A stretch of 63,524 bases of DNA, filler included, from Pelomyxa schiedti (lineage: Eukaryota; Protista; Evosea), in the NCBI GenBank assembly GCA_020536535.1. It is 5 parts of 5 records of this genome, joined end to end, with 100 filler letters (N's around TTAATTAATTAA, not from the genome) between each part and the next. Parts side by side here need not be neighbours in the genome. Positions count along the whole stretch, not along the records: positions 41,043 to 59,797 come from JAHLWZ010000730.1; 4 more parts are not named here. One strand, 5' to 3'. Positions 5,434 to 59,421 of the stretch are shown here, in pieces. The notes under the pieces are model-generated. The model did no database searches and was not told where the DNA came from. It saw only the letters and a list, made by a program, of their open reading frames with translations. How positions within the stretch are numbered: position 1 is the first letter of the stretch; each line of letters begins with the position of its first letter. Made by a program: the position numbers and the translations under genes.

Positions 5434-6618
5434 TCATGAAACACTGGCCACATAGCACCCAGAATGGCCGGCCATTTTGAAGACGACAAATCCAGTCGCA
5501 GCATCGAGCACATGAATGGTGTTTGGTCCTGGTGGGCACCCAGAACCATTGTCCAGGAACACCATCTCCGACCCAAATGACAACCTCACAACTCGACGCG
5601 TTACCCTGTGTTGCGAGAACACCTTGGTTGGCTCTAGAACGCTGAACACATCAATCCCGCACTCCTCTTCACTGGAGGTACGCACTGCAACATAAGGGCC
5701 ACCAAGTGGCTCAGCACTTCCTCTGCTCAATTCCGTGCTCACGCCAGTTGTGAGGCACTGCAGCCAACTGCTTCCATCAGTCCCAGACAGCACGGCATAC
5801 AACACCCCATTCCAGCATATCATGCTCTCAATCTGGTGCACCATCGGGTCACCGATGGAACCCATAACCGGCAGATGGGACGGGTCGGTCCACACAAGCC
5901 TGTTCCGTGCCAGCGTAGCCTCCAGGTCAATGACCATGACGCCGCCACCCCCAACCAGTGACACAACCAGTGAATTATCATCACCAACAAGCAACGCGGA
6001 GCCGACTCTCCACGGCATCGCGACGCCCTCCACCTTGGCAACACGGCCACTCTCGACTCCGTCAAAGTTCCACAGTGACAGAGGAGGAGGCGCCTTCTGG
6101 CACTCTGTGAGCACAGCGACCCAGCGCCTGTTGTTGCACCAGGGCCAGCACGCGTCCAGCCAGTCGCACAGCCTGACGTCGTCGCCGCGCCCGCTGGTGT
6201 CGATCACGGCCAGCATCTGCGGTCGACTGCGGTCCGCTGGCTGGGCCATCGTCAGGGCGAACCTGTTGCCTGCTGAGGCCTGCGGACCCACGCAGCCGTA
6301 GAACCATCTGACCTTGTTTTTGCGTCCGAAGTCGATCATTGTGGGACGGCCCACGAGTCCAAGGGTCGGCGACACGCCGAACCTGACGAACTCCTTGGCG
6401 TCGCTGCTAAGACGAGACGCCAGTTCCACGACTACGAGCCTCGCTGGGGTCACGATCCACTCTTGGCCGATGCACGACAGCAACGGGGGCGTGAGGGCCG
6501 ACACCGGGCTGCCATTGTGGAGGCCGCACCGTCCCACAATGACTCCGACGCCGAGGGCAATGAATTGGTCGCGTGCGTTGGTGTTGTCCTTGATGTCGAC
6601 TGCTTTTGGATCTGCCAT
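5434..6618 (-). CDS. Expanded-family hypothetical protein, divergent subfamily
   Basis: Intronless ORF; probable start MADPKAV. Motifs NARDQFIAL, EWIV, GVSPTLGLV, CNNRRWVAV, VIDLEAT, IHVLDAATGF. Confidence 0.8.
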   Translation of the reverse strand: MADPKAVDIKDNTNARDQFIALGVGVIVGRCGLHNGSPVSALTPPLLSCIGQEWIVTPARLVVVELASRLSSDAKEFVRFGVSPTLGLVGRPTMIDFGRKNKVRWFYGCVGPQASAGNRFALTMAQPADRSRPQMLAVIDTSGRGDDVRLCDWLDACWPWCNNRRWVAVLTECQKAPPPLSLWNFDGVESGRVAKVEGVAMPWRVGSALLVGDDNSLVVSLVGGGGVMVIDLEATLARNRLVWTDPSHLPVMGSIGDPMVHQIESMICWNGVLYAVLSGTDGSSWLQCLTTGVSTELSRGSAEPLGGPYVAVRTSSEEECGIDVFSVLEPTKVFSQHRVTRRVVRLSFGSEMVFLDNGSGCPPGPNTIHVLDAATGFVVFKMAGHSGCYVASVS

Positions 6619-41044: not shown

Positions 41045-44000
41045 TCTATCAATGCTGATGCTCATACTGCTCATAAGAAACGCAGTGATACATACCAGTG
41101 CATGCATGAGCTCATCAAGGAGTTAATGCCGCAAGTTCCTATGTTCACAGAGTACTTTGATGCCCTCTGCACCATTACCTTTTTTGCACACTATGTTTCA
41201 ACCTTGGTAGAATGTGGACTTCAACCTGATGTTAGCTTCAGCAAGCCAGAACCTCTTGAGCCGTTCCCAGATGCGATGCCGCCGATCCCAGTCCGAAAAA
41301 TAGTTTCTTTCCCAGTAAAAGTCACTTTGGGGGATTTATCGCTTGCATCTCCTTCCATAAATGAAACTGACATGAACCTTCTGCTAAACGATGTTCTTAA
41401 TGGCCACTGTTCCTCTTTTTCAAAAATGGAGCCAATGGTTCTTAGTGCTGCTAGCTCTGTAATACGTGGAAAATTGCTTCAGTTTATGCCACAAGCTGAA
41501 ACTCTGTGCTATGATGATGACGAGATAAAAGTTCCTATTGTTGCTGGTATTGTATGGGGTGTAGCAAGGAAAATGATACAAGAAATGTACTCTGTCCCCC
41601 TTAATTTATGGAAGCAGTTGTTCACAGAAATGCAGCCCCCACAGATGAATGACAATGTAACTAAAAGAATTATAAGTGCAAAGTCTTTTGATCAACGCAT
41701 AATTGTATGTAAGAAAGAGGCTGAGCTACTTCTGCAGTCCCACAGAGACAATGAGAAGAACAAAATTGAGTTCCAGTGTGCTCAAGTTGAAAAAAAGATT
41801 CAAGAGTCAGCTGCCACAGCTTTACAGAAAGCACTTGACGAGTTGAGAGTAAAAGAGGCAGAAGCCTATTCTGTAGTAAGGAGCAACTTTTGCAGTAGAC
41901 TTGAGGCTCTTGAGAAAGAAGCTAATGACGCAAGTGCCTCAATTACTGCTAAAGTTAACAGCTGCCCACAAGGTTATTCTGTTGATACTGCGAAAGTCTC
42001 TGCAGCTCGCGCGGATATTAACGCCCAAGTTGTCGATCAGCGTAATAAAATTAACCAAGCACTGGCAGAGGAAGAAAATTCAATTGCTTTACAGACTCGG
42101 AACCTAGAATATGAACTGAGACAAACGATCGAGAAGAAGAAGAAAGAAAATCTCGCTGAATTGCAAGTACAAGCACTAGCTGACCAAAGGAATCTGGAGA
42201 GTCGAGCAATGCGAGCTCAGAAGGAGTTGCAAGACAAGTTGACACAGATTCAGGTTGATTCGAGAAGTATGTTCACCTTGCTGTTGAAGACAAATGGGAG
42301 TCATGTTCTACTTGATGGCCTACGTTTATCAGTCATATCAATCTCCAACGCTGCCGAACGATGGTCAAACACAGTAATTGGTGGTTGTACAGTCTCATGC
42401 AACATAACCCCCCAAGTCCGAGCAGAAGCACTCTCTTTCTCTTTGAAAGCTCAGTTGACTTCTACCCGGGCCATGCAAGCAGAGTCCATTGTAACAGTTG
42501 ATGACCTAAATTACTGGCTTTTTGATGTGAAAATTGTGAACGAGTCACTGAATGGACCCTCGAGTAGCCAACTGCCCTCCCCTACTCTTCACAAGGAAGG
42601 TGTAACTGAAGAGGACTTTGATATTGGCCTTCTGCAAGTCGTTACCGGTGGTCCCAGTCAAAAAATTGGACGGAAAAGTGCTCTGTGCCATCTCGCATGC
42701 ACTGGAAACACTTCTTTACTGGGCTTCATCGTGGCTAAGAACCCACAGCACAAAGCATCCGCAATTTCGGCTGTCAATATTCCCGACTTAGAAATTGGTA
42801 TGAGCCCTCTTTTGATTGCCACATGCAGAAATGATGTCTTAATGGCTAAGCTTCTTCTGGATGGTCTCCTGGCAGACCCCAATTGGCGGCACCCCAACGG
42901 GTTATGCCCTTTAATTGTTGCTGTTCAACATAACTTCAAGGAGATGCTGTCACTTTTACTTACCAGGCCCAACATTAACGTGAATGTTTCCTTGGATAGT
43001 GGGATGACCCCACTTCACTTTGCTATTTTACATGAAAACCTTGATGCTATTTCACAGCTCATAAAACGTGGAGCTCTAGTAGATACAGTAAGGAGGCGCT
43101 CAGACGGACTGACTCCAATTTTATATGCGGCACACAAGGGACAACCTAAATGCCTTGGGTTTTTATTGAGTTTGACTGCCCTAGAAGGGGACATGAAAGT
43201 TAATCCTGGTTGTGTTACACCTGATGGCAGTACTGTGATGCATCTGGCAGCTGGTGCAGAGAAACTGTCTGCTGAGTGTGTGACACTACTATTACCACGT
43301 ACTACGACCCTCACTCGCTCTACTTTGAACATCTGTAAGCAATCGTCTCTTCATGTTGCAGTCCTAAGTCGAAATGACGAAGCAGCCATTCTCATCTACA
43401 ATAGTGCTCCTGCACTACTGACTGTAAAGGATGAAAATGGACTCACTCCCCTTGATTATGCTACCACTCTTCGGTCCCATGCATTTATTTCCCACATTTG
43501 TTGTACTCAGCCCTCCCTACGACACTCCCTCTCAAGGAACTTAGAAGAATACAACCCTGAAAGTAGAGAGGCCATTATTGACGCTCTTTACAGAACTAGT
43601 GCGCCCGATGTATCAAGACTGTTGCGGGTGGTAGGATCCGTCACAGTGCAGCAACTGGATAAGTACATTGATGCCTGCTTAGCAGTAAGATCTGAAGAAA
43701 TGTTAGACATCGTCATTCGCAGCACAGCGGACATCACTACAGTGAAATTTCCACCGCAACAGAAGTGCCTAGCTCACAAAGTAGCAAGTGCTGGAGTATA
43801 CAAGTGGATTGAGAAGATAGGAAAACTTACATTCACATTCCTTGAGAAGGACCGTTATGGACAGACTCCACTTCATTGCGCTCTTTTAGCTGATGATGCC
43901 AAAGTTTTGAGACGAATTCTTGACCACGCAGACAAAGAGAAAATCCCAGAAATGCTACGCATTTGCCAAGTTGCATTTGAACAGAGAAAAGCCAAATGCA

Positions 44001-47000
44001 TTCTGCATTTACTTAAGCGAAAGGAGCGATTGACCTTAAATGGGTCATACCTCTGCAAGAGTCTCTCTATCACCCCTCAAGACGTTGCTCTTGCATCTCG
44101 CTACTCATCTTTATTAATATCTGTGGAAGATGTTAGAGAAGCTGCGCAAATGTGCACCCCAGGAGTACTACGTGCTATTATAAAAGCTGCAGACCCCCTT
44201 CTTGACAAACCTAACGCATTTGATACTGTGGTTGGTGCAGCAATGAGACACAACAGGCTAGATAATTTGATGGTGCTGCAGAATATCTTTCCACGTAAAT
44301 GTAGTACCACTGCTTTAAAGCAAACCGGGTGGATACAAGCTGCTCTTCTAGGTGACGAGAAAGGAGTAATTAAAGCGAGGCTCCACCAAATCGCAGAGCT
44401 AATCCAGAAGGGTGTCGACGTTGAAGGAATGGGTGACGTTTCAGACCATCAAGTTCTTGCACAATGTGGTGTCAGAAAAGAGCTTAAGGATCTTTTGGAA
44501 GGGTTTCCCTTGGGGATCATGCCCGTGTTCAAATCCTTACCTCTACTTCATGCCGCATTTTTGTTTCGCGCATTCTGGGTACAAGATTGCCTTCCACCAA
44601 CATACAATCTTGCCCTTAAAGTAGATGGGAAAACTGCATTTGACCTTCTGGCTTATATTCCATCTGCGAGTGCGAAAATGGAAGATTTTGTAAATACTTT
44701 CTCTTTGGGTGCAATTCTAGGAAATATCACTTCAGCATTCAGCAGCTGTGTTAAAGAAAGTGGCAAAGCAACAGAACTTGTGTCCTACTTGGCAAAAGTT
44801 GCCCACAAATCCTCTCAACCCCAACTACTTCACACTTTGGTTCGTGCAGAGGCCACTGCCTCTCAAGTGGGTGACATCCTCCACAAGCAACCACGTTGGC
44901 TTGACATGTTGGATGATGAGGGATTTACACCCATCATGGCAGCGGCACAACAACAACAGCTCAGTGTTGTAGAGATGCTCTTGTCAAAGGGCTCCCGATT
45001 GGATTGCCAAAACTATGAGGGCAATAACGTTCTACACCTTCTCTTGGAAAATTACAATCCAAACCCACGAGTCACAATGTTAGCTTTAAATATTGCCCGA
45101 CGTATGCCCATACTTCTTCGGATAGTAAATCGTGACGGCTTTACTCCTGTGGCACTGGCTGCAATGAATGGGTACATAACATTTTTGGCTGCTCTCTGCA
45201 CAGAGCATCAGGTAGATGCTTGCTCCGTTCTACTTCACGGCTCTGCTTCCAACCAAGTGCGTGTTATTGACCTTTGTGTGCTCTCACTTGGTGTGAACGT
45301 GAATTCTGTGTACAATCAACCAGTTGCCCTCACACAAAAAATGAAATCCCTTGTTCGAAATGGAGATATGCCTATCCACTGTGCTGCGCGTGGAGGTGCC
45401 GTTGAAGCCTTTCATCATCTCCTTGCCCTTGGTGCTGATGCATCAATTCCAAATTCTGATGGCAAAAATGCTTTGATTATTGCCTTGGAGGGAGGAAATG
45501 TCTCTCTATGCCGTAGCTTGCTTTCAATGCCAATTCTGTACAATACCGGGGAACTTAAGGATGAGCTCTTAGTTGCGGCGGTAAAGGGTTGTACGAAATC
45601 TTTTACTCCCCTTGAGTCTCTTCTCAAGTTGGGCTTCCCCCCAAATTCTATAGATAAAACTGGTACCCCTGCATTACATTATGCAGTTGCCACAAGAAGA
45701 GTGCCGGCTATTAAACTTCTTCTATTATATGGCGCCCAGATCTTAGCCCATGACCACCTAAATCGCACAAGTTTTCACGTTGCTGCTCATCTCGGTTTTC
45801 CGGATGTTCTTCTTTCCTTGGCACGCTTTGCTGAAGAGCTTCATATCCTCAGAGAAGCACTGGAGAACTCAGACTTGGAAGGAAACACACCTCTCCACTT
45901 AGCTTGCAAGTATGACCGCGCTGAATGTGCTGCCGTTTTACTTTCATGTGGGGCTAATACACTGCTAGAGAACAAGTCTCACCTCTCTTCTGGTCAGGTT
46001 GCTGCTATTTCTGATAGCATAAATGCCGCTGCTGCTCTAGTTTCATTTGGACACAAGGAATGCTTTGCTGATATATCGTCATATCCCCTTGAGTATCAGT
46101 CTAATGCTACTTGTTTCTTGAAGAAGACGGAACTAGTTACTGCAACATCGACAAAGTTTGGAAGATATCAGAGAGAAATCTACCAATACAGTGAACTGAC
46201 TACTGGCCCTCTAGAAGAACTACTTCCTTCACTGAATGCGCTTTCTTCTCGAAGTAGTCTGAAAACGGGGTTCCCGGAACTGGATACAATACTAGCTAGA
46301 GGAAACATGATCGAAAAATTGCCACTAACATTTTCCAAAGTTGTTTTCTTATCTCGCTGGAAGCCCGACATAATCAAGATACTGCAAACAGTACTGCAGT
46401 TAAATGTTCCTCAGGCGGTGTGGGCTTCTTGTTTTCCTTCCATTCCCCCAGGTCAAGTCCTCGAGTTCCTTCAAACTGTGCAAAAACTTGTTACTCTGAC
46501 AAACTCCAACTCTGAGCATCCACTCTGGCTGTGGTTTACTTCATACTTCACTGCACCATCTGTTCCAGGCAGCAACTTTTTATTCGACTTCGATTTATTC
46601 AATTCATTCTTGGGCCTTGTACAAAGTGTACAGTGGGCCAGAGATATGGGGGTCACACGACTTCCTTGCTACCTACGGGGATTTCTGCCTGCTGAAAAGA
46701 ACTCTTTACAATGTGTAGTTCTTGCTCTCCAGCAAGCAAGCAATCCATCTCAACAAATGGCTCTCATTTCACATATTCCTCTCCACATACCGATCATTCG
46801 TCAGCTTACCAGTAGGGGGGCCAAGTACTTTGTTAGAAGCGCCTGCTTTGCATGTGGAACCTCTGTCGTTTTAGTTTCGTCACAAGCAGAGACTCTACTT
46901 GGCCACTTGACTCCTATTACACTATCAGAATCCTTGGTATGCCTAAGTTTGAAAGGAATGCAGCTGGCACAAACGGCGTCCAACTATTTTGTGGAAGATT

Positions 47001-50000
47001 TATTTAACGACAATAACCTTCCCCTGTGTGCCAAAAAGCTTCTCACAGATACGATTTTGAAACGGCCAAGCACCGAGCAGTCCAATTGTCGAGCGTGGCT
47101 CGCTGCTGCATCAATGACCTATTACACATTTGGCTATGACATTTTACACCAGCTCACACAGTTGCACTACAGTTTAGAAGATATACTGAGCCTGAGTAGC
47201 CAACTGGCAAGGCTAACATCCCCAAAAGGGGTAGGTGAAGCCCTTGAAAGTAGAAACCCAAAACTTGCATTGGAGGCATTAATGCGAAGAGACTACCCAG
47301 AAAAAGACATTGAGACACTTTTAAGAGAAATGGGTACTCCATGCGCCAACCATTGGGGTACAAAATTGCACTTGTTCCCCTTTGATGGAAGCCCAATTGT
47401 GTGCTTGGCTCCAAGTGAAATTCAAATCCTGCGGAGCATTCACGAAGCTATGATCATGACTGAGACTCCAAAGAGCAGTATCGGACTTTGTGAGAAGGCT
47501 CGAGAATTGGGAGCCATTATTTTTCAGCACCCTAATCCCAAAATTGTGGGACAATTGATAGCTATACTTGCAGTCGTATATGAGCAGGTTTATAAGATAA
47601 AACCGTACGTTGTCCAATGCATGGCAGTAGCTTCTCTTGTATTAGTTGATCTTCTTCCAAGAGATGACGGACTAAAGGGAAGGATCGCGCAAATGGCTAC
47701 AGGAGAAGGCAAATCTCTGACAGTTGCCTTGTTGGCCGCCTTTTATGCGGTACAGGGTCACTTTGTGGATGTCATAACCTCAACACACTACCTTGCAGTG
47801 AGAGACTATAAAAAGTTTTCTCCATTCTTTGCGTCCCTTGGAATATCCTGTTCTACAATTGCTGTCTCTCCATACCCTTCTACAAAAGATTTCAAAGGCA
47901 CAGTGTTATATGGGATAAACACTGATTTCGAGTTCACAGTGTTAAGAGAGGGTATCAACAATACAACAATCCAATTTTCAGAATGCATGCAGACGAAATT
48001 GGTAGTACCCCGCACTCCAGATGTGATAATTTCCGATGAATCAGACAATTTACTCATTGATGAAGGTCTTAATTCTGCCAGACTTGCCATCCCATCCACT
48101 GAAAATACTGCATGGGTCTTCAAACCCACGTTAGAGTATGTACTGGCTGAGAGGGGAAAGAATAGGTCACCTACTGTGCCGGGAGTGAGGCAGTTTCTGA
48201 CTCTCTACCTTGGGGGAAAGTTTACCATAGATGCGGCAACATTAGAGGAATCCTCACTTGCCACATGGATTGAAAGTGCCAAAACATCCCTGAAGAAGGT
48301 CAAAGGGAAAGACTACGTAGTAGATCAAAACAAGACCACACACCAACTAGAAGTGCAGATTGTGCACCTTGGGACTGGGAGAATCATGCATGGTTCTAGG
48401 TGGTCAGGTGGCGTACATGAATTCGTGGAAGCAAGGGAAGGACTATTGCCACAGGATCAAAGCTACACTATTGCGTCAATATCACACCCTACCTTCTTTG
48501 GCCGTTATCGGCGTATCTTCGGCCTTACTGGCACAGCTGGAGAGCCAGCGGAAAGAAACGAAGTGCAGGAGATTTACAAAGTAGACTCGTTCGACGTTCC
48601 ACCTAATCGCAAGTGCATGAGGAAAAAACTGCCCACAAGGATTTTTCACACATCTGAGCAACACAGGGAAGCCATTCTGGAGTCCATTTCTACAATACAG
48701 TCTCAGAGAAGAAGCATATTAATACTGTTTTTATCAATTTCTGAAAGTGAGGAATTTTCAAAGCTTTTGTATTCAAAGGGGATTACCCACTCGTTACTCA
48801 ATGAAATGCAGAGAGAAGACGAAGACTACATTGTATTCAAGGCTGGGCAACCAGGTGCAGTAACGGTTGCCACTAATACAGCAGGTCGTGGTACCGACAT
48901 AATCCTGAGCCCTGAAGTGAAAAACCATTCAGGGTTGCACTGTGTGTTCACTTTCTTCCCTGAAAATTTTAGGGTGGAATGTCAAGGACTTGGAAGGGCT
49001 GGAAGGCAAGGGGAACCAGGAACATGTGAGATTTTGGTGTCTGCTCAGGAACCCGGAGTGCAAAAACTGATAGTGAGTGCTGACCTCTCTGATATTTCAG
49101 TAGAGTTATTATACCAACTAAGGAGTCTAGATGTTCAATCTCAGTCGGCGTCAAGAATGGAAAGGAGTAAGCTTGAACAAATTTTGTTTGGATTCCTGGA
49201 GCACTTCTTCAAATTGTACGCATCCGTTAAGAACAGACTCTCAAATGATCACGAACTTATCAGTGCACTCGCAGCCCAAAGGGAAAAATTACCCTTCGAG
49301 CACAATAGAGATCTCTTCTTGCACAGATTGCATGAAGTGTGGGCTAAACTCTTCACTGAGATGACTGAGATGCAAAATGAGGCAGAAATGAGCAATCACT
49401 TTAATGAAAACTTCTCTTCACTCCAAGATTTGATGTCTGTTAGTTGTACAGTGGCATGTTGTGCTTTTCAAAAGTTGCTTAAGTCAGCTCAAACAGGAGT
49501 TACACGTGTTCTGCCTCTAGACGTGGAGCCAAGAACTAAAATAGCAACTTCCCAGAACACAACCACTTTATCCGTTCCAAAATCAACAAACTGCACACCC
49601 CCAAGTTCGAACAACGTAACGCCTGTGGGACTCCCTCAGGTCATTCCAAAGTCAAGTGTAGGCTCAAACATGATTCCATCACCTGTTACCTCCACAAGCA
49701 CTAACCAAAGTTCAAAAATTGATTCGAACACAAAGCGAAGTCAGAGTTCTGTACTACAAGAAACTTCTCCTCAATTACCCCCCTGTCAACCATCCTCACC
49801 CAAGATAACCAGCACCAAGCCAGCCACTACACATGTCGAGGAAGGAAATTCTGCTGTGTCCGCTGTTCCCAGGCAACAGCCAACCGCAACGGGGACATCA
49901 TCGGGCAGACATCTTCCCACGCCGCGACAATTACCACTCCCAACAGGACCAATACCCAGGCCAAATCCAGAGTTCACACCACCACAAACACAAAAGAGTG

Positions 50001-51025
50001 TGATGCCATACGTACAGGCAAATGGCACAAGTGCTATGGGAGGAATCACTGGAGCCTCTTCCACTATTCCAAGGCAGCCAGTTGTATTGGGTGCAACATT
50101 GGGCCTTCACCCACCCGCACAAGGAACCGCAACGCAACTCGCTTTTTCGGGTCGAATGCCACTTTCAGCGCAGCCTAATTCACAACCGAACTTAGGAGCA
50201 ACGCCAGCTTTTTCACCAGCACAACCCGAAAAACGAGTCCCCGCCCCCACTCCAAACACGGCACTCGACAAGGTGTCTGCGTCTACACTAAAAGGGGCTG
50301 TCCCTCCATTGGGCGTCAACTCCACCGTTAAGCCTGAGTCAGCAACAAATACTGCAGCACTGTTCGCGATTCCAAGAAAACAGTCACCCCCTGTAACTGG
50401 GCCGAAATTAGGCACAGACAGCCCAAGTAAAGTATCTCACTATTCTGCTTCGAAGGAAGGATTCACCCAACCTCTCCCATCACCGATACCCGGAATGGGG
50501 AAACTTACCTCTCCAGATATATTGGCAACACACTCAGCAGCTGCGCAGGCTGTTTCTATCCGGACTCCTCCAAACGCAACCGGTTCCAGCACAGCACCAG
50601 CAGCAACCACCACTCCGCGGGTGCTTACCCCCGCAAAATCGACAGCTACCACAACCCCACAACCAACCACGACCCGGATCCCGCCCCCAGTCACCTATGT
50701 GGCTTCGCCTACCTCCACAAATCCGGGTCAAATTCAAAGCCCCCGCGTAACGCCGCGAGAACCTGGGCGTCCCTCTGCGCCACAAGCAGCCACCCCTCGC
50801 TCTTTACCTACAGCACCACTGCAACACCTCACAAGCACCAAGCCCACCACTGTGAGTCCCACTCTGGTAGGAACAAATTCAGCAGCGGTGGCGACAAGCA
50901 CGCCTCCGATCCTGAAAAAATTCTGCACTCTCAACTCCACCACACCCACAGCAACACCAACCTTTCTGCACATACAACAGCAGACCCCAGCACCTCCAAC
51001 GAAATCCGCTGTAAATCGACTGTAG
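41045..51025 (+). CDS. Giant intronless protein: coiled coil + ankyrin repeats + SecA-like DEAD/helicase ATPase + P/T/S-rich tail (5' possibly truncated by gap)
   Basis: ORF of at least 3307 aa, open back to the gap. Ankyrin motifs GMTPLHFA, GQTPLHCA, GNTPLHLAC. SecA motifs IAQMATGEGKS, VDVITSTHYLAVRD, IISDESDNLLID, TGRIMHGSRWSGGVHEFVEAREG, GLTGTA, AGQPGAVTVATNTAGRGTDIIL, QGLGRAGRQGEPG. Confidence 0.9.
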   Translation, partial: SINADAHTAHKKRSDTYQCMHELIKELMPQVPMFTEYFDALCTITFFAHYVSTLVECGLQPDVSFSKPEPLEPFPDAMPPIPVRKIVSFPVKVTLGDLSLASPSINETDMNLLLNDVLNGHCSSFSKMEPMVLSAASSVIRGKLLQFMPQAETLCYDDDEIKVPIVAGIVWGVARKMIQEMYSVPLNLWKQLFTEMQPPQMNDNVTKRIISAKSFDQRIIVCKKEAELLLQSHRDNEKNKIEFQCAQVEKKIQESAATALQKALDELRVKEAEAYSVVRSNFCSRLEALEKEANDASASITAKVNSCPQGYSVDTAKVSAARADINAQVVDQRNKINQALAEEENSIALQTRNLEYELRQTIEKKKKENLAELQVQALADQRNLESRAMRAQKELQDKLTQIQVDSRSMFTLLLKTNGSHVLLDGLRLSVISISNAAERWSNTVIGGCTVSCNITPQVRAEALSFSLKAQLTSTRAMQAESIVTVDDLNYWLFDVKIVNESLNGPSSSQLPSPTLHKEGVTEEDFDIGLLQVVTGGPSQKIGRKSALCHLACTGNTSLLGFIVAKNPQHKASAISAVNIPDLEIGMSPLLIATCRNDVLMAKLLLDGLLADPNWRHPNGLCPLIVAVQHNFKEMLSLLLTRPNINVNVSLDSGMTPLHFAILHENLDAISQLIKRGALVDTVRRRSDGLTPILYAAHKGQPKCLGFLLSLTALEGDMKVNPGCVTPDGSTVMHLAAGAEKLSAECVTLLLPRTTTLTRSTLNICKQSSLHVAVLSRNDEAAILIYNSAPALLTVKDENGLTPLDYATTLRSHAFISHICCTQPSLRHSLSRNLEEYNPESREAIIDALYRTSAPDVSRLLRVVGSVTVQQLDKYIDACLAVRSEEMLDIVIRSTADITTVKFPPQQKCLAHKVASAGVYKWIEKIGKLTFTFLEKDRYGQTPLHCALLADDAKVLRRILDHADKEKIPEMLRICQVAFEQRKAKCILHLLKRKERLTLNGSYLCKSLSITPQDVALASRYSSLLISVEDVREAAQMCTPGVLRAIIKAADPLLDKPNAFDTVVGAAMRHNRLDNLMVLQNIFPRKCSTTALKQTGWIQAALLGDEKGVIKARLHQIAELIQKGVDVEGMGDVSDHQVLAQCGVRKELKDLLEGFPLGIMPVFKSLPLLHAAFLFRAFWVQDCLPPTYNLALKVDGKTAFDLLAYIPSASAKMEDFVNTFSLGAILGNITSAFSSCVKESGKATELVSYLAKVAHKSSQPQLLHTLVRAEATASQVGDILHKQPRWLDMLDDEGFTPIMAAAQQQQLSVVEMLLSKGSRLDCQNYEGNNVLHLLLENYNPNPRVTMLALNIARRMPILLRIVNRDGFTPVALAAMNGYITFLAALCTEHQVDACSVLLHGSASNQVRVIDLCVLSLGVNVNSVYNQPVALTQKMKSLVRNGDMPIHCAARGGAVEAFHHLLALGADASIPNSDGKNALIIALEGGNVSLCRSLLSMPILYNTGELKDELLVAAVKGCTKSFTPLESLLKLGFPPNSIDKTGTPALHYAVATRRVPAIKLLLLYGAQILAHDHLNRTSFHVAAHLGFPDVLLSLARFAEELHILREALENSDLEGNTPLHLACKYDRAECAAVLLSCGANTLLENKSHLSSGQVAAISDSINAAAALVSFGHKECFADISSYPLEYQSNATCFLKKTELVTATSTKFGRYQREIYQYSELTTGPLEELLPSLNALSSRSSLKTGFPELDTILARGNMIEKLPLTFSKVVFLSRWKPDIIKILQTVLQLNVPQAVWASCFPSIPPGQVLEFLQTVQKLVTLTNSNSEHPLWLWFTSYFTAPSVPGSNFLFDFDLFNSFLGLVQSVQWARDMGVTRLPCYLRGFLPAEKNSLQCVVLALQQASNPSQQMALISHIPLHIPIIRQLTSRGAKYFVRSACFACGTSVVLVSSQAETLLGHLTPITLSESLVCLSLKGMQLAQTASNYFVEDLFNDNNLPLCAKKLLTDTILKRPSTEQSNCRAWLAAASMTYYTFGYDILHQLTQLHYSLEDILSLSSQLARLTSPKGVGEALESRNPKLALEALMRRDYPEKDIETLLREMGTPCANHWGTKLHLFPFDGSPIVCLAPSEIQILRSIHEAMIMTETPKSSIGLCEKARELGAIIFQHPNPKIVGQLIAILAVVYEQVYKIKPYVVQCMAVASLVLVDLLPRDDGLKGRIAQMATGEGKSLTVALLAAFYAVQGHFVDVITSTHYLAVRDYKKFSPFFASLGISCSTIAVSPYPSTKDFKGTVLYGINTDFEFTVLREGINNTTIQFSECMQTKLVVPRTPDVIISDESDNLLIDEGLNSARLAIPSTENTAWVFKPTLEYVLAERGKNRSPTVPGVRQFLTLYLGGKFTIDAATLEESSLATWIESAKTSLKKVKGKDYVVDQNKTTHQLEVQIVHLGTGRIMHGSRWSGGVHEFVEAREGLLPQDQSYTIASISHPTFFGRYRRIFGLTGTAGEPAERNEVQEIYKVDSFDVPPNRKCMRKKLPTRIFHTSEQHREAILESISTIQSQRRSILILFLSISESEEFSKLLYSKGITHSLLNEMQREDEDYIVFKAGQPGAVTVATNTAGRGTDIILSPEVKNHSGLHCVFTFFPENFRVECQGLGRAGRQGEPGTCEILVSAQEPGVQKLIVSADLSDISVELLYQLRSLDVQSQSASRMERSKLEQILFGFLEHFFKLYASVKNRLSNDHELISALAAQREKLPFEHNRDLFLHRLHEVWAKLFTEMTEMQNEAEMSNHFNENFSSLQDLMSVSCTVACCAFQKLLKSAQTGVTRVLPLDVEPRTKIATSQNTTTLSVPKSTNCTPPSSNNVTPVGLPQVIPKSSVGSNMIPSPVTSTSTNQSSKIDSNTKRSQSSVLQETSPQLPPCQPSSPKITSTKPATTHVEEGNSAVSAVPRQQPTATGTSSGRHLPTPRQLPLPTGPIPRPNPEFTPPQTQKSVMPYVQANGTSAMGGITGASSTIPRQPVVLGATLGLHPPAQGTATQLAFSGRMPLSAQPNSQPNLGATPAFSPAQPEKRVPAPTPNTALDKVSASTLKGAVPPLGVNSTVKPESATNTAALFAIPRKQSPPVTGPKLGTDSPSKVSHYSASKEGFTQPLPSPIPGMGKLTSPDILATHSAAAQAVSIRTPPNATGSSTAPAATTTPRVLTPAKSTATTTPQPTTTRIPPPVTYVASPTSTNPGQIQSPRVTPREPGRPSAPQAATPRSLPTAPLQHLTSTKPTTVSPTLVGTNSAAVATSTPPILKKFCTLNSTTPTATPTFLHIQQQTPAPPTKSAVNRL

Positions 51026-51375
51026 GTAGTTTGTAGAGAATAAACATTTATTCTATTCTTAGCACTCAATCGTTGTGGTAATTCTTGTCTTCCAAAGGAT
51101 GCAGTTGCTGTGGTGAGTGTGTAGGTGGGTGTTGGGTAAGTGGAAGTGAGAATCCCGCCGATCTTAGTGGGGTTCTACACTGAATTTCTTTTGCTACTGG
51201 GAAAGGTAGTTTGTTTGTACCTCCCACTAAGATGAGGAGAAACAGCCCTCCTCTTGATTGTTTGAGCGCTTTAAGTTCGAATGAACAGGGGCAGGAGCAT
51301 TTCCTTCCCCAACATGTATCATTCAGGTTTTGTACAACATTTTTTTTGGAGAACATATCGACGCTTGGATTGGTC

Positions 51376-54300
51376 TCAGGGTAAATCGTTGGCTTTCAGG
51401 AGCCTGTCTGGGGAGGATGATACGGAATGGGGACGGTGGTGATGGTGATGGTGCTTGCTGCGGTGGCTACCAGACTGGTGCGGCGGCGGCGTGGTGACAG
51501 GTGCGGGAGTTGAGTTGGCGGCTGCAGAGAGCGTTGTGGGCCTGCCGTTGGAGATTGCATCCAGTTCTACTTGAACGCCGGAGAATGCTGTTGTTTTGTG
51601 AGCGTTTTAGGGATGGATGCAAGTCGAAGTTAACTTACTTGGTCTTTTTTGAGGCTCTTGTGACCAGCAGACTTTGATCAAGTTGGCGATTCTTTCAGGT
51701 ACCGACGGTGGTATCGTCAACCTTTTCCCTGAGATAACGAACTGCGGTATCACTGGTAAAAAGTGAGCAAAGCAGAGGGCAAAAAAGTTGTTGTACTCCA
51801 GTCTTGTGTAAACTCGGCTCCTGAGTAGGACTGAATGCCGGAAAACACTTCATACAGTAAAACAGCAAAAGAAAAAACATCAGTTGACATGGAGTACTGG
51901 CCTCCTTGATATACCTCAGGAGACATGAACGTGGGGGCTGGACTTTGAGTAAGTAGTTAAAAAGCTCAATTGGAGATCAACACACTTCCAATCCCTCTCG
52001 TCATCCTCTTTGTGTCATCTGTGCATTCACGTGTCGTTCCAAAGTCAGTTAATTTGCATACCACATTTTGGTTTGCATCAAGAGATACAACTAAAATATT
52101 ATCTGGTTTAAGGTCCCTATGCATAATACCACTACAATGGTTTAAGAGAAGATAATGTTGGGAACAGGGGAAACTACCTCTTGTGTAAAAAGGTCATTCC
52201 TGTTGCAGAGTTCAACATGGCTTTAAATTTATATTCCTCACTCAGAGGAGTTGCAGATTCCCCAAATACATATTTGCTCAAACTTCCGAGTGGAAGAAAT
52301 TCGGTGACTATGCACAATGGGTTGAGGCAGAATCCCACAAAAGACACTATGTATGGGCTCCGTAACTCTTCCAACACACCACATTCCCTCTCAAAGTCCC
52401 GTTTCTCTACTGGGAGAGGGTCTTGGTTATGCAATACTTTCACTGCCACTTCTTGCCCTCGCCATTCGGCCTTGAATACAGAACCATAGCCACCCTTGCC
52501 TACTTGAGTTTGCCGGTTGATTTCATCAAAGTCAAGTCTGACAGAGAGTTTTGTTTCTGCAGAAATTGGAAGGGAAAACTGACTGGTTTTCCCTGTCAAT
52601 TCAGCAGAAATTCGCGCTTCACTGGAAATGATGGTTGTGCACAATGCTGTTAAAGTGGCTTGCACATCTACACTGAAGTGCGGTTTGATCACGCCGTTTG
52701 CAGGATAAAAGCTCAGAGTGTATTTATGGGTATTGATGTCATCAATTGAGTACCTTGCTTTATCTTTTGTAGAATTTGTGATTTGAAATGACTCCTTCAC
52801 TGCTACACCAACAGGCAGCCGCCCACTACCCGAGAAAGTGAGTTTCAGAACAGAGAGTGAGAGTGGAAACTCTTCTCGAGGTGGAGGTGTAGTTGAAGTT
52901 GAAGTCGATTCTCTTGGTGTCCCACCCGAATCTCGTGTGACACTGGAATCTCTTGGAGTCACACTGGCATCTCTTGGAGTAACACTAATTGCTATTTAGG
53001 TTTTCTTCAAGGGAGGTGGAGTGAACCTTCCTGCAGACTTGCCAGCACTGACAGATAGAAGAGAGGAACCAACTAAATTAATGGAAAGGGCTGGTTTCAC
53101 AGGCTGGTCAGAAGACAACCTGGCGTTGAATTTGCTATTTTGGAAGAAATTTGGTTGAGGCAATTCACAACCAGAAATAAAGACGGGAATCTTGTCTCCT
53201 CTTTCTGTTTGTAATTTAGTGGCTCTTTGCAAACAAATGAGGAAGTTAAGTACTTGAATTGACAAGGAATCTAGAACACAAGCCATCATCAATGTGCTTA
53301 ACACAAATTGCGATTGTGTGTGGTCTTGGAGGATCGAGATGTATTGGGGTGTAGCACCGTGGTATAATGGGTGGGATCATGGACAGTAGCACTTCAAGGG
53401 AGACAATACTTTTGAATTGCCTGAGTATTGAAAAGTAGGTTTGATCTTTGGCCCACTGGACAAAACCCTCCTGGTCCAATGTAATTTCCACCAAAGGACT
53501 TGGAGTGACGTTAGATTTGTCTGTTTCTGATGGCACAAACTGTTTTTCTTCACCAGATGCTGCCAGTAGACGCTCAAGGAAATCTTTTGAAGGTCGACCG
53601 TACAGGTCCACAAACTGTTCAAAAAGCTGAAGAACGGTCAGGTGTGATGGGATGTTTTCCAGAGGTTTTCCTAAATTTTTTTAGAGAAAGGTACAGATAA
53701 AGGGATTACCTGAAAGAGAGAGTACTGTGACTGATACATTTACCATTCCTGGGAAAAATGTATTAAGAAACTGTTCCACCTCCGCTCGTGGGTTGGATGG
53801 CAGAATATGCAAATAATCTCCAGGTGAGGGACTAAATAGCAAGTAACTATTAAGAAGTCGGGTGTAATAGTTACTCGATGAAATTCTTCTCTGTGGCGAA
53901 TTCAACATAAAAATAATGTTCAGTTGCACTCGAGAGAGCTTTGTATTCAGCAACTTTGGTGACTGTAACCATATGGTAGCCACTTGGGCAAACCGCCGTT
54001 GATGCTTTGTGTCTTGCTATTGTGTATGTTTAATTTCCTTGTAAACTTTAAATTCAAAAGTAAAAACCAGGAGCAACTGAAGGGATCATTAAAATTCGAG
54101 GCGAAGGCAGGTCTGTTGAAACAAGGCTGGAAGTAATGGCTTTCATCCACCGATTAAAGGGCTTGACACCCCTTATTTTGTTTTTACCTCATTTTACATC
54201 CCTATTTTGGGATACCTGTCCGTCCTTTCAACATCAATTTTCACAAGATCCATAAAAGGGGAGGCCCCAAGTCGCCTCAGCATAGTATATAATTCAATGG

Positions 54301-56996
54301 CGAAACCACAGAACTTAAGGTAATTACTAAACAGAAAAGAATGCTCCAAGTACAAACATGTTGGTATTTTGTGGAACCAAATCCAAGTACAGCAAATCGG
54401 GTCCCTGCCAGCTTTTTATGGTGCTGGTTCAATGGTACCCCACACAAAAACTCATAGAACTTTTGAGCATTACAGGGCATAAGTTTGTTTTCAGTAGCCC
54501 AAGTTGATGTAAGGAAAATGAGAGTGAGACAATTTGAGAGCAGTTTGAGAGGAAACCTGTGATGAGGGTTAGAAAAAACAAACAATACAACTTCCCAACC
54601 TATCCATAGAATATATAAGGATCTGCTCGTTTAGATTGGATTCGAAGAATGAATGCAATTGTCTAGCATAAGAAGCTGTTACTCCTCCCTGTGATCCATA
54701 CAATATGCAAATGCTTGCAGAGGTCTCGGATGTGGAAGAAGTGCTATCATCAAGATTTTTTGTTGATCTAGGGGAGAGAAACATAGGGTGTTCATATTCT
54801 AGGATAGCATGTGCCTTATCTGACATCACACCAGATAAGTGTTTTTGCTGAAATTTTTGTTGAATGTGAAATGGTGACAGTTCAGTGGCTCTTTTATCGA
54901 GTGCATAAATAGCAGCCCGTCGCTTCTCGATGATGTGTTCGTCTAAAGATTTTGGCTGCCCTCCCCCGCCAATGCAGCCACTTGGGCAGCACATGCACTC
55001 CACAAAATGTTTTTGGTGTACCCCTTTGGCAGTTGAGTCAGGATCCTCCAATCCCTCAGTGGAGAGAAATTCTTGGATTTTCTTTGAACTGCTCACTATT
55101 GCAATATCCAACATGGACCTAAGCCTATGCCCTGGAGTAGCATCAACCTTCGTTTCCAGCCAGGACTCTGTATTCCCAATATTGCGGCATTCCTCGAAAG
55201 TTGCCGATAAGCTTGGAGTAAGTTTCTCCTTTGAGAGATAGGTGTAAGCCACACGAAGAGCTGCTTCCTTTTGAGGGTGGAGACAGTATTAAAATTAAGA
55301 AAAAAGGTCCTAAACACACAGTAACACCGCCACTGGTGGCAAATAAGCTCCCTCCTCCACTTGATAAATTAAATGGTTCGTCAAAGGCACAGTTTCCGGC
55401 GCCATGCAGTGAGGCCCATGCAGGGGTCCCTAACCGCTTTTTCAGTAGAGTTCCCATTTCTCTCACAGTAAGAACAACATCTACATCAGAGTTCCCACTT
55501 TTAAGTAAGTTAGGACAGGAAGAACTGGTGAAGTATACTCACTCGGGGTCCTTGAGCTCTGGTCTGGTAATTTCCTCCTTTTTAGCAATGCAGGGCATCA
55601 GAGCTACAACAAAATACTTTTGCCTTGGGATATTTTGTTCTTTCATGAACATTCTTATCATGGAGCCAAGCATCATCATTGGTGACCTTCCTTTCGACAA
55701 CAGTGGTCGGAGATGGGGATATTTCTGTAAAAAACGAGTGTTAAAGAAATGCCATGTATGAGGATAAAACATTTTCAACTAGCTTGACCCAGCCAGGACA
55801 GCATGAAGTGAAGAGAGGGAATGGGCCACCTGAATTCACCCGTTCTACTAACTCCATAGCTTCATGAGTTGCACATGTATCAGCAGCAAATTGTGTATCA
55901 AAAACAAGGTCGAATCCAATTGTGTGAGCTGCTTCCACAAGTTTTGCTGTGCAATCCTGTCCAGGTTCTTCCCCCAGCATCTCTCCAATAGAGACTCTAC
56001 TTGAAGGAGCTGTCTGAAGTACTAGGATTTTTTTTTCCTTTCCCACTTTTGTTGCTGAAATAGCTAGGTCAAGTTCTTTCTCAACAATTGCACAGTCATT
56101 CCTTTCCGCTACAGCACCAGTTGGACACACTAGAGTGCACTGCCCACATGTTATGCAACTGGTAGCATGCAATGGAAGATCATTTTCAAAGACAATCGGA
56201 CTGAGTGGAGTATTGAACACAATTCTCAAAACATTCATGTTCTGTATCTCCGAGCAAATTCGAACACATCTAGTGCACAGACAACACAAACTTTGGTCTC
56301 GAATGACTGCATATTCCTGTTGTTCATCATTGACAGCACTTGATTTCTAAATAATCTAAGCCCAATTCGAGAATAAAAGATGAAAAGAGTAACCCTTGTA
56401 AATGCAATTAAGTCTTCAATTTCTGGGGCAGGTAGCATTCCTTCCAATCTTCTGGTGCCCAAGAATTCAGCCAGATTGGTTGAAGATTGGTACAAGACTG
56501 CTGCCGAGTTGGTGGTGATTGACATACCTTCCTCCACTTGTGTTTTACAAGCCATGACAAACTGAGGCTTCAAATGATGGAGTTGAGCAAGCATCTGGTT
56601 CGGTTTTTTACCAAAAATGGGTGGCGTTCCGGGGGGAGAAGGGCTTGGTGCAGAAAAGCTCGGGGATGTAGGAGGCCCTCGTTCCACCTGCACTACACAT
56701 ACTCCACACTTACCAAAAGGAGGCACACTAGGGTGGTGACAAAGTGTTGGTATATGTATGCCGTTTTCTCTGCACGCTCGTAAAATAGTCCAGCCATATT
56801 GAGCACGTATTGGACGTGAATTGACGCGAATATTAACAAAAGGGGGAACAATTGCCTGAAAAAAACAAGAAAAAAAAAGGTGAACAAGAAGAAAGCAAAG
56901 ATGCACATGTGCAAGTACTTTTTGAGGGGGCAAGTATTCCGGTGGCGGAAGTGCCTCAGAAGAAACCAACAACCCATGCCGTCGGGACAGGAACAT
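51376..56996 (-). CDS. hydA: [FeFe]-hydrogenase ([2Fe-2S] + 2x[4Fe-4S] + H-cluster) - flavodoxin - FAD-binding - Ig-like - protein kinase fusion; ~17 introns; start uncertain (56996 or 57151)
   Basis: Fe-S: IPTLCHH..GKCGVCVV..MACKT, CCLCTRCVRIC, CITCGQCTLVCPTGA. H-cluster: TSCCPGW, MPCIAKKEE, ECMCCPSGCIGGGGQP. Flavodoxin: ILYGSQGG, FAVLGFGSTKYQHFCG. FAD-binding: PGDYLHILPSN, PRCYT, GLCSRFL. Kinase: GKGGYG, VAVK, HRDLKPDN, DFG, GTPTFMSPE, DVFSFA, CWSQEPQKRP. All exons join in frame through short GT-AG introns; TGA at 51376-51378. Confidence 0.85.
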
Positions 56997-57311: not shown

Positions 57312-59421
57312 TTAGCCCTTGAGGCAGCATGCCTTGTACTTTCTTCCAGAACCACAGGGGCAAGGGTCATTCCTACCAACCTTGGGGCCAGTGGGTGCTT
57401 TTCGTTTGATTGTAATGCCCATCTCTTTGGCGCGTCTTTGTATGTTCTCCTCTTGGCGTCTGGAATTGTGGTTGTTTTAGTGCCGAGAGGGTGTGAATGG
57501 GCAGTCTAAAATACCTGTCAAACTCGTCTGCTTCTCTCTTCGTTGTTGGGAACCCGTTGTCAAGTCGCACTACACGTTCAGACATAAGCTTGTCATGGAC
57601 CATTGATATTTTGAACTGACTGATGTCTTCTCGGAGGTTTTTATACTGCGATTTCATGATATCAAAGCCAGTGAGAAGTTCGAACTCGCCGACCTGTTCG
57701 ACGTTGGTGAAAGTGACAAAGCGGTAAATCACAGTAGAATCACCTGAATCTTGAAGTTGTAACAACCTGCCCAAACAATCATTCGGAAAGTTTCCTTGTC
57801 GGGGAATGCGAGGTCCAGGTCGCGGTTCATATCCGCTTGGACTGTGTGAACTTGCCCACTCATAACCGCTTTCACTCCCTTTTGAAAAATAAGTGCAACC
57901 AGGATAAGACTTTCAACGAAATACCTCACAGTGGAAAATCTCCATCGTGCTTGTTATTACTTTGCCCACAATATGTAACTGAAGTCCGGTGCAACCTTGA
58001 AGGAAGATTTTTACACACGGAGCTTCAATCCTATATTGGCAGTCAGTACAATCGATAAAACATATTGCAGCACCCTTTTTTTGAGGCATTATTAAGAAAA
58101 ATAGCCAGTGAGGAGGGGAAGAGGTGGAGGTGGAGGAGGAAAATCAACCTCGGGCACTTCGGTGGAAGTCAATGTTGCATTCACACCAGTTTTCATAGAC
58201 ACGGTGTGGATATTGCTTCCTCTGCCTGACCCAATCATAGCCTGCAATCGAGCTTGGTCTTTGGCAGCAACTGGAGCATCACCCGTGATATTTGCCTTTC
58301 CTGTTCCTGGCATGAGTTTCGGTTTCCCGTCCGCGGAGGCAGTTGTGGTTGTAGAATTGGTGACAAGCTCTGGAGGAAGCGAGGAATTATTAGCTGCAGA
58401 TTGAAGTTGCTCAGGTGGTACTGTGTCGGCAGACACAAACCCTTCAGGAAGGGGTGCAGAGGGATTGGTCTTGGCATGGATAATTTGGGGATTTGCAACG
58501 GGCACCGCTGACGCGGCTGCTTCTTGTTGTGCCTGACGGCTTTTTGCCGCCCTCGTGTGGGCACTGGAGTCGAGAAGAGGAGCAACGTTAGAACAGGTCA
58601 TCGTTAAGAGTGTAAGCAACAATAGACTTACTCAGGCTCGTGGTCAATGGGAACCGCCACCACGTTGCAGTGCTTTTTGTGGTCTCTCCATCCCTTCTTG
58701 AAGCACTGTGCTGAGCAAAACACCACCTGTTGGCACCTAAAAAAACATACACACAGGTGTCACCGAAACTCACACCAGTTTTCATAGACACGGTGTGGAT
58801 ATTGCTTCCTCTGCCTGACCCAATCATAGCCTGCAATCGAGCTTGGTCTTTGGCAGCAACTGGAGCGTCACCCGTGATATTTGCCTTTCCTGTTCCTGGC
58901 ATGAGTTTCGGTTTCCCGTCCGCGGAGGCAGTTGTGGTTGTAGAATTGGTGACAAGCTCTGGAGGAAGCGAGGAATTATTAGCTGCAGNNNNNNNNNNNN
59001 NNNNNNNNNNNNNNNNNNNNNNNNNNNNNNNNNNNNNNNNNNNNNNNNNNNNNNNNNNNNNNNNNNNNNNNNNNNNNNNNNNNNNNNNAAAAAAAAAAAA
59101 AAAAAAAAAAAGCAACCTGCTGCACTGCTTGTGCACGGTTGGATCCAACTTGGCCACGACGGTGCCGCAGCTCCAGCACTTGTGGGTTTGTGGTTGTGGG
59201 GGGGTGCCGCTGTCCGCTGTGGCGGTCGGAGTGCTCGTTGTCGTGGCTGTGGCTGTGGTTGCGGCGGTGGCCGTGGCTTCTACTGCAGCAGGCGAGGCGG
59301 TCGTTTGTGCCGCGGTTGTTGCTGCCGGGGTTGCAGGTGCGTTGTTGGTCGATGTGTTATCCGTTGCCGCCGCGGCGGTGGGCGTTGTCGCAGTTTCGGG
59401 CTTCGGTGTTGCGTCGGTCAT
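57312..59421 (-). CDS. MYND zinc finger + C-CAP/cofactor-C-like beta-helix + C-terminal SEC-C motif protein (spliced)
   Basis: MYND: CWSC...KQCSR|[27 protein letters not shown]-like: [45 protein letters not shown]|GVKAV..VHTVQAD, then [13 protein letters not shown]. Terminal [23 protein letters not shown]. Confidence 0.75.
58771..58988. repeat. Duplicate of 58182-58399 lying within intron 1, next to a gap (likely assembly artefact)
   Basis: Near-identical ~218 bp; abuts an N-run. Confidence 0.8.

What the first reader, a model, noticed from the sequence alone, without database searches (positions are those of the whole stretch)
51376..56996. [FeFe]-hydrogenase fused to a protein kinase: candidate eukaryotic H2/redox-sensing signalling enzyme
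Seen: the ORF track shows only fragments, but splicing ~17 short introns by hand gives one polypeptide of roughly 1,600 aa (my estimate). The order is [2Fe-2S], 2x[4Fe-4S], H-cluster domain, flavodoxin, CPR/CysJ-type FAD-binding domain, S/T linker, Ig-like domain, complete kinase, His-rich tail. The kinase-bearing exon (52174-52984) has no ATG until deep inside the kinase domain. It lies in the same frame as the upstream exon, separated by a single TAA inside a 42-nt GT-AG intron (52985-53026), so it cannot be a stand-alone gene. Established: H-cluster motifs L1 TSCCPGW, L2 MPCxxKKxE and L3 ExMxCxxGCxxGGGQP are all intact, as are the proton-path-equivalent residues by my alignment to CpI (Cys of TSCC, HEAME glutamates, LVER Arg, Ser of LSKGRSP). 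The kinase keeps VAVK, HRD and DFG. Sensory [FeFe]-hydrogenases are known in bacteria (group C, PAS-linked), and hydrogenase-flavodoxin-FAD/NAD fusions are known in anaerobic protists. I know of no described hydrogenase-eukaryotic-kinase fusion. Inference: H2 or the Fe-S/flavin redox state controls kinase output.
Basis: partly seen in the sequence, partly recalled or inferred. Interest (0 to 1): 0.96.

Follow-up and report, generated by a model that had tools for sequence, protein, structure and literature searches.

The report
Amoeba hydrogenase fused to protein kinase
An anaerobic amoeba makes one protein that joins a hydrogen-converting enzyme to a protein kinase, and its relatives keep the same design or swap in other signalling parts, which points to a family of hydrogen or redox sensors that I found described nowhere for eukaryotes.

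Summary
The fusion is real. The gene is Pelomyxa schiedti Pelo_9301 (KAH3758890.1, 1,593 aa, 18 introns), filed only as '[FeFe]-hydrogenase'. An RNA contig splices the key 42-nt intron, joining the end of the FAD domain to the kinase exon, and one DNA unitig spans nearly the whole gene.

It is not a one-off. The same layout (Fe-S, H-cluster, flavodoxin, FAD barrel, Ig, Raf-like kinase) occurs in a Pelomyxa paralogue, in Mastigamoeba and in metagenome contigs, one of them an intronless genomic ORF. The hydrogenase halves form one clade and the fused kinases form one clade (both 100/100). Sister proteins carry RasGEF, Ig plus beta-propeller, or a SAM-like tail instead of the kinase.

Intact members keep the H-cluster ligands and the proton path. 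All lack the NAD(P)H-binding domain and have a remodelled FAD motif. The NAD(P)H electron exit is therefore cut, and a signalling domain sits in its place.

Best reading: a cytosolic H2/redox sensor derived from CysJ-fused group A hydrogenases, independent of bacterial group C sensors. Sensing, cofactor loading and kinase control are inferred, not shown. I found no description in the papers searched; one supplementary figure and one key paper could not be read.

The parts
51376..56996 (-). Whole gene, 19 exons, 1,593 aa (KAH3758890.1, Pelo_9301)
56919..56996 (-). Exon 1: basic start plus a family-conserved motif PxP(D/E)YLPPQ; supports this ATG
56514..56840 (-). [2Fe-2S] NuoG-like domain (aa 32-140) with an exonic Pro/Ser insert at 56574-56672; the His-ligated cluster motif is absent, as in the canonical eukaryotic CysJ fusions aligned
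   Evidence: Pfam Fer2_4 E 8e-16; RNA continuous over 56394-56700
56101..56304 (-). Two [4Fe-4S] motifs (aa 195-262)
54938..56031 (-). H-cluster domain (aa 286-602): L1 at 55789-55809, L2 at 55572-55598, L3 at 54953-55000; proton-path C362, E342, E345, R349, S382 kept
   Evidence: model matches CpI with TM 0.8
54788..54937 (-). Degenerate small-subunit segment (aa 603-652); the RKSHEN and HELLH motifs are lost across the family
   Evidence: Pfam E 0.038
54138..54712 (-). Flavodoxin (FMN) domain (aa 678-825), FMN-binding loops kept
53164..54014 (-). CPR/CysJ-type connecting domain plus FAD barrel (aa 850-1075); RxYSIASS changed to RCYTPIH (53339-53359), 9-residue loop deleted; no NAD(P)H-binding domain follows
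52985..53026 (-). Key 42-nt GT-AG intron holding the in-frame TAA; seen spliced in RNA; same position in the paralogue
52882..53157 (-). Ser/Thr/Pro-rich disordered linker (aa 1078-1155) with repeated S/T-P-R motifs
   Evidence: sequence; pLDDT under 50
52543..52869 (-). All-beta Ig-like (MSP/ASH/Cep192-type) domain (aa 1160-1268)
   Evidence: Pfam E 0.002-0.006, below cut-off; all-beta with pLDDT over 90; not fold-searched on its own
51553..52524 (-). Complete TKL-type protein kinase (aa 1275-1535): GxGxxG, VAVK, HRDLKPDN, DFG, SPE
   Evidence: closest solved folds CRAF, CTR1, BRAF, Z about 30
51379..51552 (-). Low-complexity tail with a run of six His (51436-51453); not conserved in sequence across the family

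Best explanation
A cytosolic one-component H2/redox-sensing kinase, member of an Archamoebae family of signalling [FeFe]-hydrogenases.

Shown: (1) The protein is one chain. (2) It descends from the CysJ-fused group A hydrogenases of anaerobic protists. (3) In the family's ancestor the NAD(P)H-binding domain was lost, the FAD site and the small-subunit lid were remodelled, and an amoebozoan Ig plus TKL-kinase cassette was attached where the NAD domain had been. (4) H-cluster ligands, proton path, Fe-S relay, FMN loops and kinase catalytic residues have been kept under purifying selection.

Inferred: the H-cluster is loaded and equilibrates with dissolved H2. Electrons pass through the Fe-S relay to FMN but cannot leave through NAD(P). 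The redox state of the module therefore tracks H2 partial pressure, or the ferredoxin/flavodoxin pool. The redox-linked opening and closing known for diflavin reductases (own knowledge), or redox-dependent oligomerisation, then switches the kinase, or the RasGEF in the sister protein. A likely use is tuning fermentation, movement or symbiont handling in a cell whose metabolism depends on methanogens keeping H2 low (PMC10579272).
For: - Key intron spliced in RNA; DNA contiguous.
- Same architecture in the paralogue (split only by a 100-N gap with a duplicated overlap), in Mastigamoeba m51a1_g2097 and g192, and in JGI, ENA and Logan contigs.
- Family hydrogenase halves form one clade against 15 canonical long hydrogenases, 100/100. 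Ten fused Ig-kinases form one clade among 48 amoebozoan Ig-kinases, 100/100.
- Output swapped for RasGEF in Pelo_9198 (Pfam E 6e-54; all introns about 40-80 nt, no gap), Ig plus beta-propeller in two transcript-derived Mastigella proteins, and a SAM-like tail in Mastigamoeba g3373 (lead only, score 0.83).
- NAD_binding_1 and the GxGxG motif absent in all members that extend that far, present in canonical fusions.
- Between the Pelomyxa paralogues, pN is 0.09 against pS 0.66-0.72 in the H-domain, flavodoxin and kinase alike.
- Most modules are more conserved within the family than among canonical enzymes.
- Predicted non-mitochondrial by the genome authors.
Against: - No biochemistry.
- The active site is of the fast catalytic type (C299, M353 and M497 equivalents kept), unlike bacterial sensory groups C and D (PMC8163306).
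- The maturases of P. schiedti carry predicted organelle-targeting signals (PMC8887013), so loading of the di-iron site in the cytosol is uncertain, although maturase-poor protists are reported to make active hydrogenases (PMC11216029).
- About 80 disordered residues separate sensor and kinase, which allows uncoupled domains.
- One member has a dead kinase and an altered L2 (P0010); the g3373 model lacks L3.
- No RNA contig over the H-cluster and flavodoxin exons in the runs available.
Confidence: 0.6

Rival explanations
1. A sensor, but not of H2. In the cytosol the protein carries only the Fe-S clusters and FMN, without the di-iron site, or uses O2 damage of the H-cluster. It reports O2, Fe-S supply or general cytosolic redox state to the kinase, loosely like the hydrogenase-derived Nar1/IOP1 proteins (own knowledge).
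For: Maturases predicted in the organelle. Family-wide changes around the active-site pocket and lid: FG to FA/FS/FP, VMEAA to VTEAA, TIMEE to AxxEA, an extra conserved Cys583, loss of the small-subunit motifs. Flavodoxin and the 2x[4Fe-4S] region are strongly conserved.
Against: Residues that matter only for the di-iron site and proton transfer (C362, K420, M415, M584, E342, E345, R349, S382) are nearly invariant across the family; they would be expected to drift without a di-iron cofactor.
Confidence: 0.2
2. A metabolic ferredoxin- or flavodoxin-linked hydrogenase whose appended kinase, RasGEF or propeller regulates, anchors or scaffolds the enzyme. Information then flows from signalling to metabolism, or the two halves work independently.
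For: Prototypical group A catalytic motifs. Published need for a cytosolic route to reoxidise ferredoxin in this amoeba (PMC10579272). Long flexible linker rich in S/T-P-R sites that the kinase could phosphorylate.
Against: Several unrelated output domains on the same degenerate module are the pattern of an input module; a RasGEF is an output and would not regulate an enzyme in cis. Canonical-type long hydrogenases appear to coexist in the genome (Pelo_7496 has the canonical N-terminal motifs). Low RNA depth in the runs laid, though contig depth cannot rank genes.
Confidence: 0.17
3. Annotation or assembly artefact: two neighbouring genes joined by gene modelling.
For: RNA does not cover the whole gene. 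Smart-seq adaptor ends lie inside the kinase exon at 52703 and 52443. One Mastigamoeba model (g192) is probably over-joined to a transporter.
Against: Spliced RNA across the junction. Single open frames on transcript-like contigs and on 35-40 kb genomic contigs without introns. Same intron position in the paralogue. The internal cDNA ends have no in-frame ATG before 52218, so they cannot encode a whole kinase; they fit truncated cDNA.
Confidence: 0.03

Closest known systems
CysJ-fused cytosolic group A [FeFe]-hydrogenases of anaerobic protists (Trichomonas, Pygsuia, Stygiella, Carpediemonas; PMC4989108, PMC10579272)
   Same: Same N-terminal order: [2Fe-2S], 2x[4Fe-4S], H-domain, flavodoxin, FAD barrel; about 30% identity over 1,000 aa; nearest group in the tree.
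   Different: NAD(P)H-binding domain gone, FAD motif and small-subunit segment remodelled, signalling domain appended; long separating branch of about 0.8 changes per site. The published account of the P. schiedti long hydrogenases (CysJ with an NADH pocket) does not hold for Pelo_9301, Pelo_16670 or Pelo_9198.
Bacterial putative sensory [FeFe]-hydrogenases, groups C and D (TmHydS, TamHydS; PMC8163306, PMC8924675)
   Same: H-cluster domain tied to signal transduction and proposed to report H2.
   Different: Those lack C299 and the group A proton path; group C carries a PAS domain. This family keeps the group A site, has no PAS, derives from group A, is eukaryotic, and outputs through a TKL kinase or RasGEF in the same chain.
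Amoebozoan Ig + TKL kinase cassette (intracellular part of Entamoeba transmembrane kinases and many Pelomyxa, Mastigamoeba and dictyostelid kinases)
   Same: 33-42% identity over Ig and kinase; Raf/CTR1/Roco4-like fold.
   Different: No transmembrane or LRR input; the input is a metalloenzyme module. The fused copies form their own clade.
Nar1/IOP1 (hydrogenase-like cytosolic Fe-S proteins; own knowledge, not tested)
   Same: Eukaryotic cytosolic hydrogenase derivative with a non-metabolic role.
   Different: Nar1 lacks the di-iron site and has no flavin or kinase domains; here the di-iron pocket residues are kept.

Membership tests
Group A [FeFe]-hydrogenase H-domain | L1, L2, L3 motifs with four cluster Cys, plus C299, M353, K358, M497 equivalents | tested here: met
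Group A [FeFe]-hydrogenase H-domain | Proton path E279, E282, R286, S319 equivalents | tested here: met
   E342, E345, R349, S382 align with the algal enzyme, checked against a Glu-to-Gln variant entry
Group A [FeFe]-hydrogenase H-domain | Reaches the curated family cut-off (TIGR02512 405.95 bits; NF040763 765 bits) | tested here: not met
   347.5 and 428.5 bits; best models but below cut-off, while a canonical fusion passes TIGR02512
Group A [FeFe]-hydrogenase H-domain | Holds a di-iron subcluster and turns over H2 | not testable with these tools
   needs biochemistry
CysJ-fused NAD(P)H-dependent hydrogenases of protists | Flavodoxin and FAD-binding domains after the H-domain | tested here: met
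CysJ-fused NAD(P)H-dependent hydrogenases of protists | NAD(P)H-binding domain with GxGxG motif | tested here: not met
   absent here and in all family members that extend that far; present in canonical rows
CysJ-fused NAD(P)H-dependent hydrogenases of protists | FAD motif RxYSxAS and the pyrophosphate-binding loop | tested here: not met
   RCYTPIH and a 9-residue deletion, family-wide; whether FAD still binds is untested
Group C/D sensory [FeFe]-hydrogenases | Loss of C299 and of the group A proton path; Met changes at 353 and 497 | tested here: not met
   all retained
Group C/D sensory [FeFe]-hydrogenases | PAS domain (group C) or C-terminal Cx2Cx4Cx16C cluster motif | tested here: not met
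   no PAS hit in Pfam or NCBIfam; flavodoxin follows the H-domain
Group C/D sensory [FeFe]-hydrogenases | Slow turnover and signalling upon H2 | not testable with these tools
   needs assay
TKL protein kinase, catalytically competent | GxGxxG, VAxK, HRDLKPxN, DFG, xPE | tested here: met
Amoebozoan Ig + TKL cassette | All-beta Ig domain directly before the kinase | tested here: met
   Pfam Ig hits are below cut-off

The most novel reading that the evidence does not exclude
Archamoebae evolved their own hydrogen-sensing receptors: a group A hydrogenase with its NAD(P)H exit removed became a reusable H2-sensing input module, wired directly into kinase and Ras signalling. I found no H2 receptor described for a eukaryote in the papers searched; this would give a molecular handle on how hosts monitor their methanogenic symbionts.
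Probability: 0.5. Interest if true: 0.96.

Novelty: categorically new. Interest (0 to 1): 0.88.

Why it matters
Hydrogen sensing has been proposed only for prokaryotes in the papers I could read, and even there the [FeFe] sensors are called putative (PMC8924675). This family puts sensor and a readily assayed output (phosphorylation or nucleotide exchange) in one chain, so the question 'can an H-cluster switch a signalling domain' becomes directly testable.

It also bears on how H2-producing protists regulate syntrophy with methanogens. And it corrects the published metabolic map of P. schiedti: at least three of its long hydrogenases cannot bind NADH through the CysJ domain as proposed.

I rate it categorically new as a eukaryotic class because it fails membership of both neighbouring families. 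The general idea of a sensory hydrogenase exists in bacteria, and the sequences themselves are already public.

Tried and rejected
- Stand-alone kinase gene: rejected (spliced junction, no ATG, orthologous single frames).
- Misassembly near 53000: rejected (single unitig).
- Alternative splice sites for two introns: enumerated; only four combinations stay open and RNA selects one.
- Mitochondrial-type targeting by the basic N-terminus: considered. The genome authors' predictors did not call it, and the start motif is shared by the whole family.
- Prokaryotic members: a scan of 185,579 genomes gave only partial 23-33% CysJ/flavodoxin-like matches.
- Entamoeba members: none appeared in three protein searches; these searches are limited, so absence is not shown.
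- Literature: ten searches found no description of a hydrogenase-kinase or hydrogenase-RasGEF fusion. Nyvltova 2013 and 2015 were not held. Fig. S4H of PMC10711303 shows HydA domain composition as an image I could not read, so the kinase may be drawn there; its text does not mention it.
- PDB sequence search with the FAD exon alone found nothing.
Full report
Observation. The minus strand between 56996 and 51376 holds a gene broken by short GT-AG introns. Splicing 17 of them in a script gave one open frame of 1,607 aa. A protein search later returned the deposited product of this very contig (length 18,755, the size of the piece): KAH3758890.1, Pelomyxa schiedti Pelo_9301, 1,593 aa, named only '[FeFe]-hydrogenase'. 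It differs from my model by one more in-frame 42-nt intron at 53499-53540. Both paralogues share that intron position, and with it the two models are identical.

Reads. Three single-cell RNA runs (one sample) confirm nine introns. The decisive one, 52985-53026, is skipped in a 367-nt contig that starts in the last strand of the FAD barrel (53200) and ends in the Ig domain (52792). One DNA unitig covers 51250-56896 without differences; this run may be the source of the assembly. RNA does not cover the H-cluster or flavodoxin exons, so full continuity rests on the gene model and on orthologues. Template-switch adaptor ends at 52703, 52443 and 56988 are best read as truncated cDNA, since no in-frame ATG precedes 52218 in the kinase exon. 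An unspliced contig over intron 1 carries its two differences inside the intron, which fits intron status.

Anatomy. Pfam, exon by exon, gives [2Fe-2S], 2x[4Fe-4S], H-domain, a weak small-subunit segment, flavodoxin, FAD_binding_1, weak Ig hits and a protein kinase. The N-terminal model matches CpI and HydA1 with TM about 0.8. The C-terminal model is an all-beta domain plus a kinase closest to CRAF, CTR1 and BRAF. All four H-cluster Cys, the C299, M353, K358 and M497 equivalents and the proton-path residues are kept. The kinase has every catalytic motif.

A family. A search with exon 6 against 1.84 billion representatives and three follow-up searches found the same module elsewhere. It is fused to Ig plus kinase in the paralogue Pelo_16670, whose 'partial' annotation comes from a 100-N gap with a duplicated overlap. 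It is fused to Ig plus kinase in Mastigamoeba balamuthi m51a1_g2097 and g192, in four JGI proteins on transcript-like contigs and in one further metagenome contig. A Logan protein has the same layout with a dead kinase. A 1,804-aa intronless frame lies on 35-40 kb eukaryotic contigs from gut metagenomes; these are 58.6% G+C, gene-dense and encode a hydrogenase, so I took them for a protist, not human DNA. Other members end in RasGEF (Pelo_9198), Ig plus a probable beta-propeller (two Mastigella eilhardi transcripts) or a SAM-like tail (lead only). No prokaryotic member was found.

Evolution. On 456 columns from the ferredoxin, H-domain and small-subunit region, 17 family rows separate from 15 canonical long hydrogenases with 100/100 support on a long branch (four fragments or duplicates left out; LG+G4, midpoint root). 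On Ig plus kinase, the ten fused kinases form one side of a branch among 48 amoebozoan Ig-kinases with 100/100 (eight hits lacking the Ig domain left out). Kinase-bearing members occur in three subgroups, so the kinase fusion is most simply ancestral, with later output swaps; this order is inferred, as the trees are unrooted. Between the two Pelomyxa paralogues, synonymous sites are near saturation while pN is about 0.09 in H-domain, flavodoxin and kinase. Family-wide changes include RxYSIASS to RxYTPxH with a 9-residue loop loss, loss of RKSHEN and HELLH, FG to FA/FS/FP, and an extra Cys in L3; FMN loops are kept.

Mechanism. Shown: one chain, intact metal and kinase motifs, no NAD(P)H domain, an old fusion, interchangeable outputs. 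Inferred: the H-cluster is loaded, the Fe-S/FMN chain adopts a redox state set by H2 or by ferredoxin, and a redox-linked change in shape or assembly controls the output (0.6). Rivals are an O2, Fe-S or redox sensor without the di-iron site (0.2), a metabolic enzyme with appended regulation (0.17) and artefact (0.03). The setting fits: this amoeba needs low H2 and dies when its methanogen is inhibited (PMC10579272). The weak points are the organelle-targeted maturases (PMC8887013), the catalytic-type active site and the long flexible linker.

Comparison and novelty. It is not a member of the NAD(P)H-dependent CysJ fusions (NAD domain and FAD motif fail) nor of groups C/D (C299 and proton path kept, no PAS; PMC8163306). 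It may work like the latter while descending from the former. The papers that list this gene describe it as a NuoG-FeFe-CysJ enzyme with an NADH pocket and do not mention a kinase. Earlier Mastigamoeba deposits are truncated before the kinase, which may be why it was missed. Ten literature searches found no description. One supplementary figure (PMC10711303 Fig. S4H) and two Mastigamoeba papers could not be read, so prior depiction is not excluded. The joined spliced sequence was not sent to any search tool; exons were searched by reference and whole-protein steps used the stored database protein.

Verdict. Real, conserved and apparently undescribed; function untested. Interest 0.88.

Noticed in passing
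window 41102-51025 (+): Intronless 3,307-aa frame with many ankyrin repeats and SecA DEAD, preprotein-binding and P-loop domains, in an otherwise intron-rich genome; convergent with the hydrogenase-kinase gene, 350 bp away. Possibly of viral or mobile origin; not tested.
   Followed up: partly
window 57320-59200 (-) and L003 5807-7459: The upstream gene with a SEC-C motif is duplicated together with the hydrogenase-kinase (66% nucleotide identity), so the two Pelomyxa copies come from a segmental duplication or from a second divergent genome in the assembly.
   Followed up: partly
window 58730-59200: Run of N flanked by a repeated stretch (58092-58622 recurs after the gap): a scaffolding artefact like the one that splits the paralogue.
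   Followed up: no
L011 3001-9542 (KAH3758981.1, Pelo_9198): Hydrogenase-flavodoxin-FAD module fused to RasGEF_N and RasGEF; regular short introns, no gap. No RNA check was possible. Deserves its own study.
   Followed up: partly
Proteins P0005 and P0008 (matching AGA37391.1 and AIW52598.1, Mastigamoeba): These deposits are listed as soluble organelle HydA in Table S2 of PMC10711303 but belong to this family, are cut short at the C-terminus and start well upstream of the family's conserved N-terminal motif, so their apparent targeting extensions may be mis-called (inference).
   Followed up: partly
L002 (Logan SRR33036527) 501-5884: Family member with both an altered L2 (SSC for MPC) and a pseudokinase; keeps an intron at the same place as intron 3 of this gene.
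   Followed up: partly
Protein P0002 (Cyanophora paradoxa, 4,122 aa): Model with seven near-identical H-domain repeats before flavodoxin and FAD domains; likely a tandem-repeat or gene-model artefact.
   Followed up: no
Protein P0162 (Mastigamoeba m51a1_g192): The model runs on into an MFS transporter and lacks part of the kinase N-lobe; probably two genes joined by annotation.
   Followed up: no
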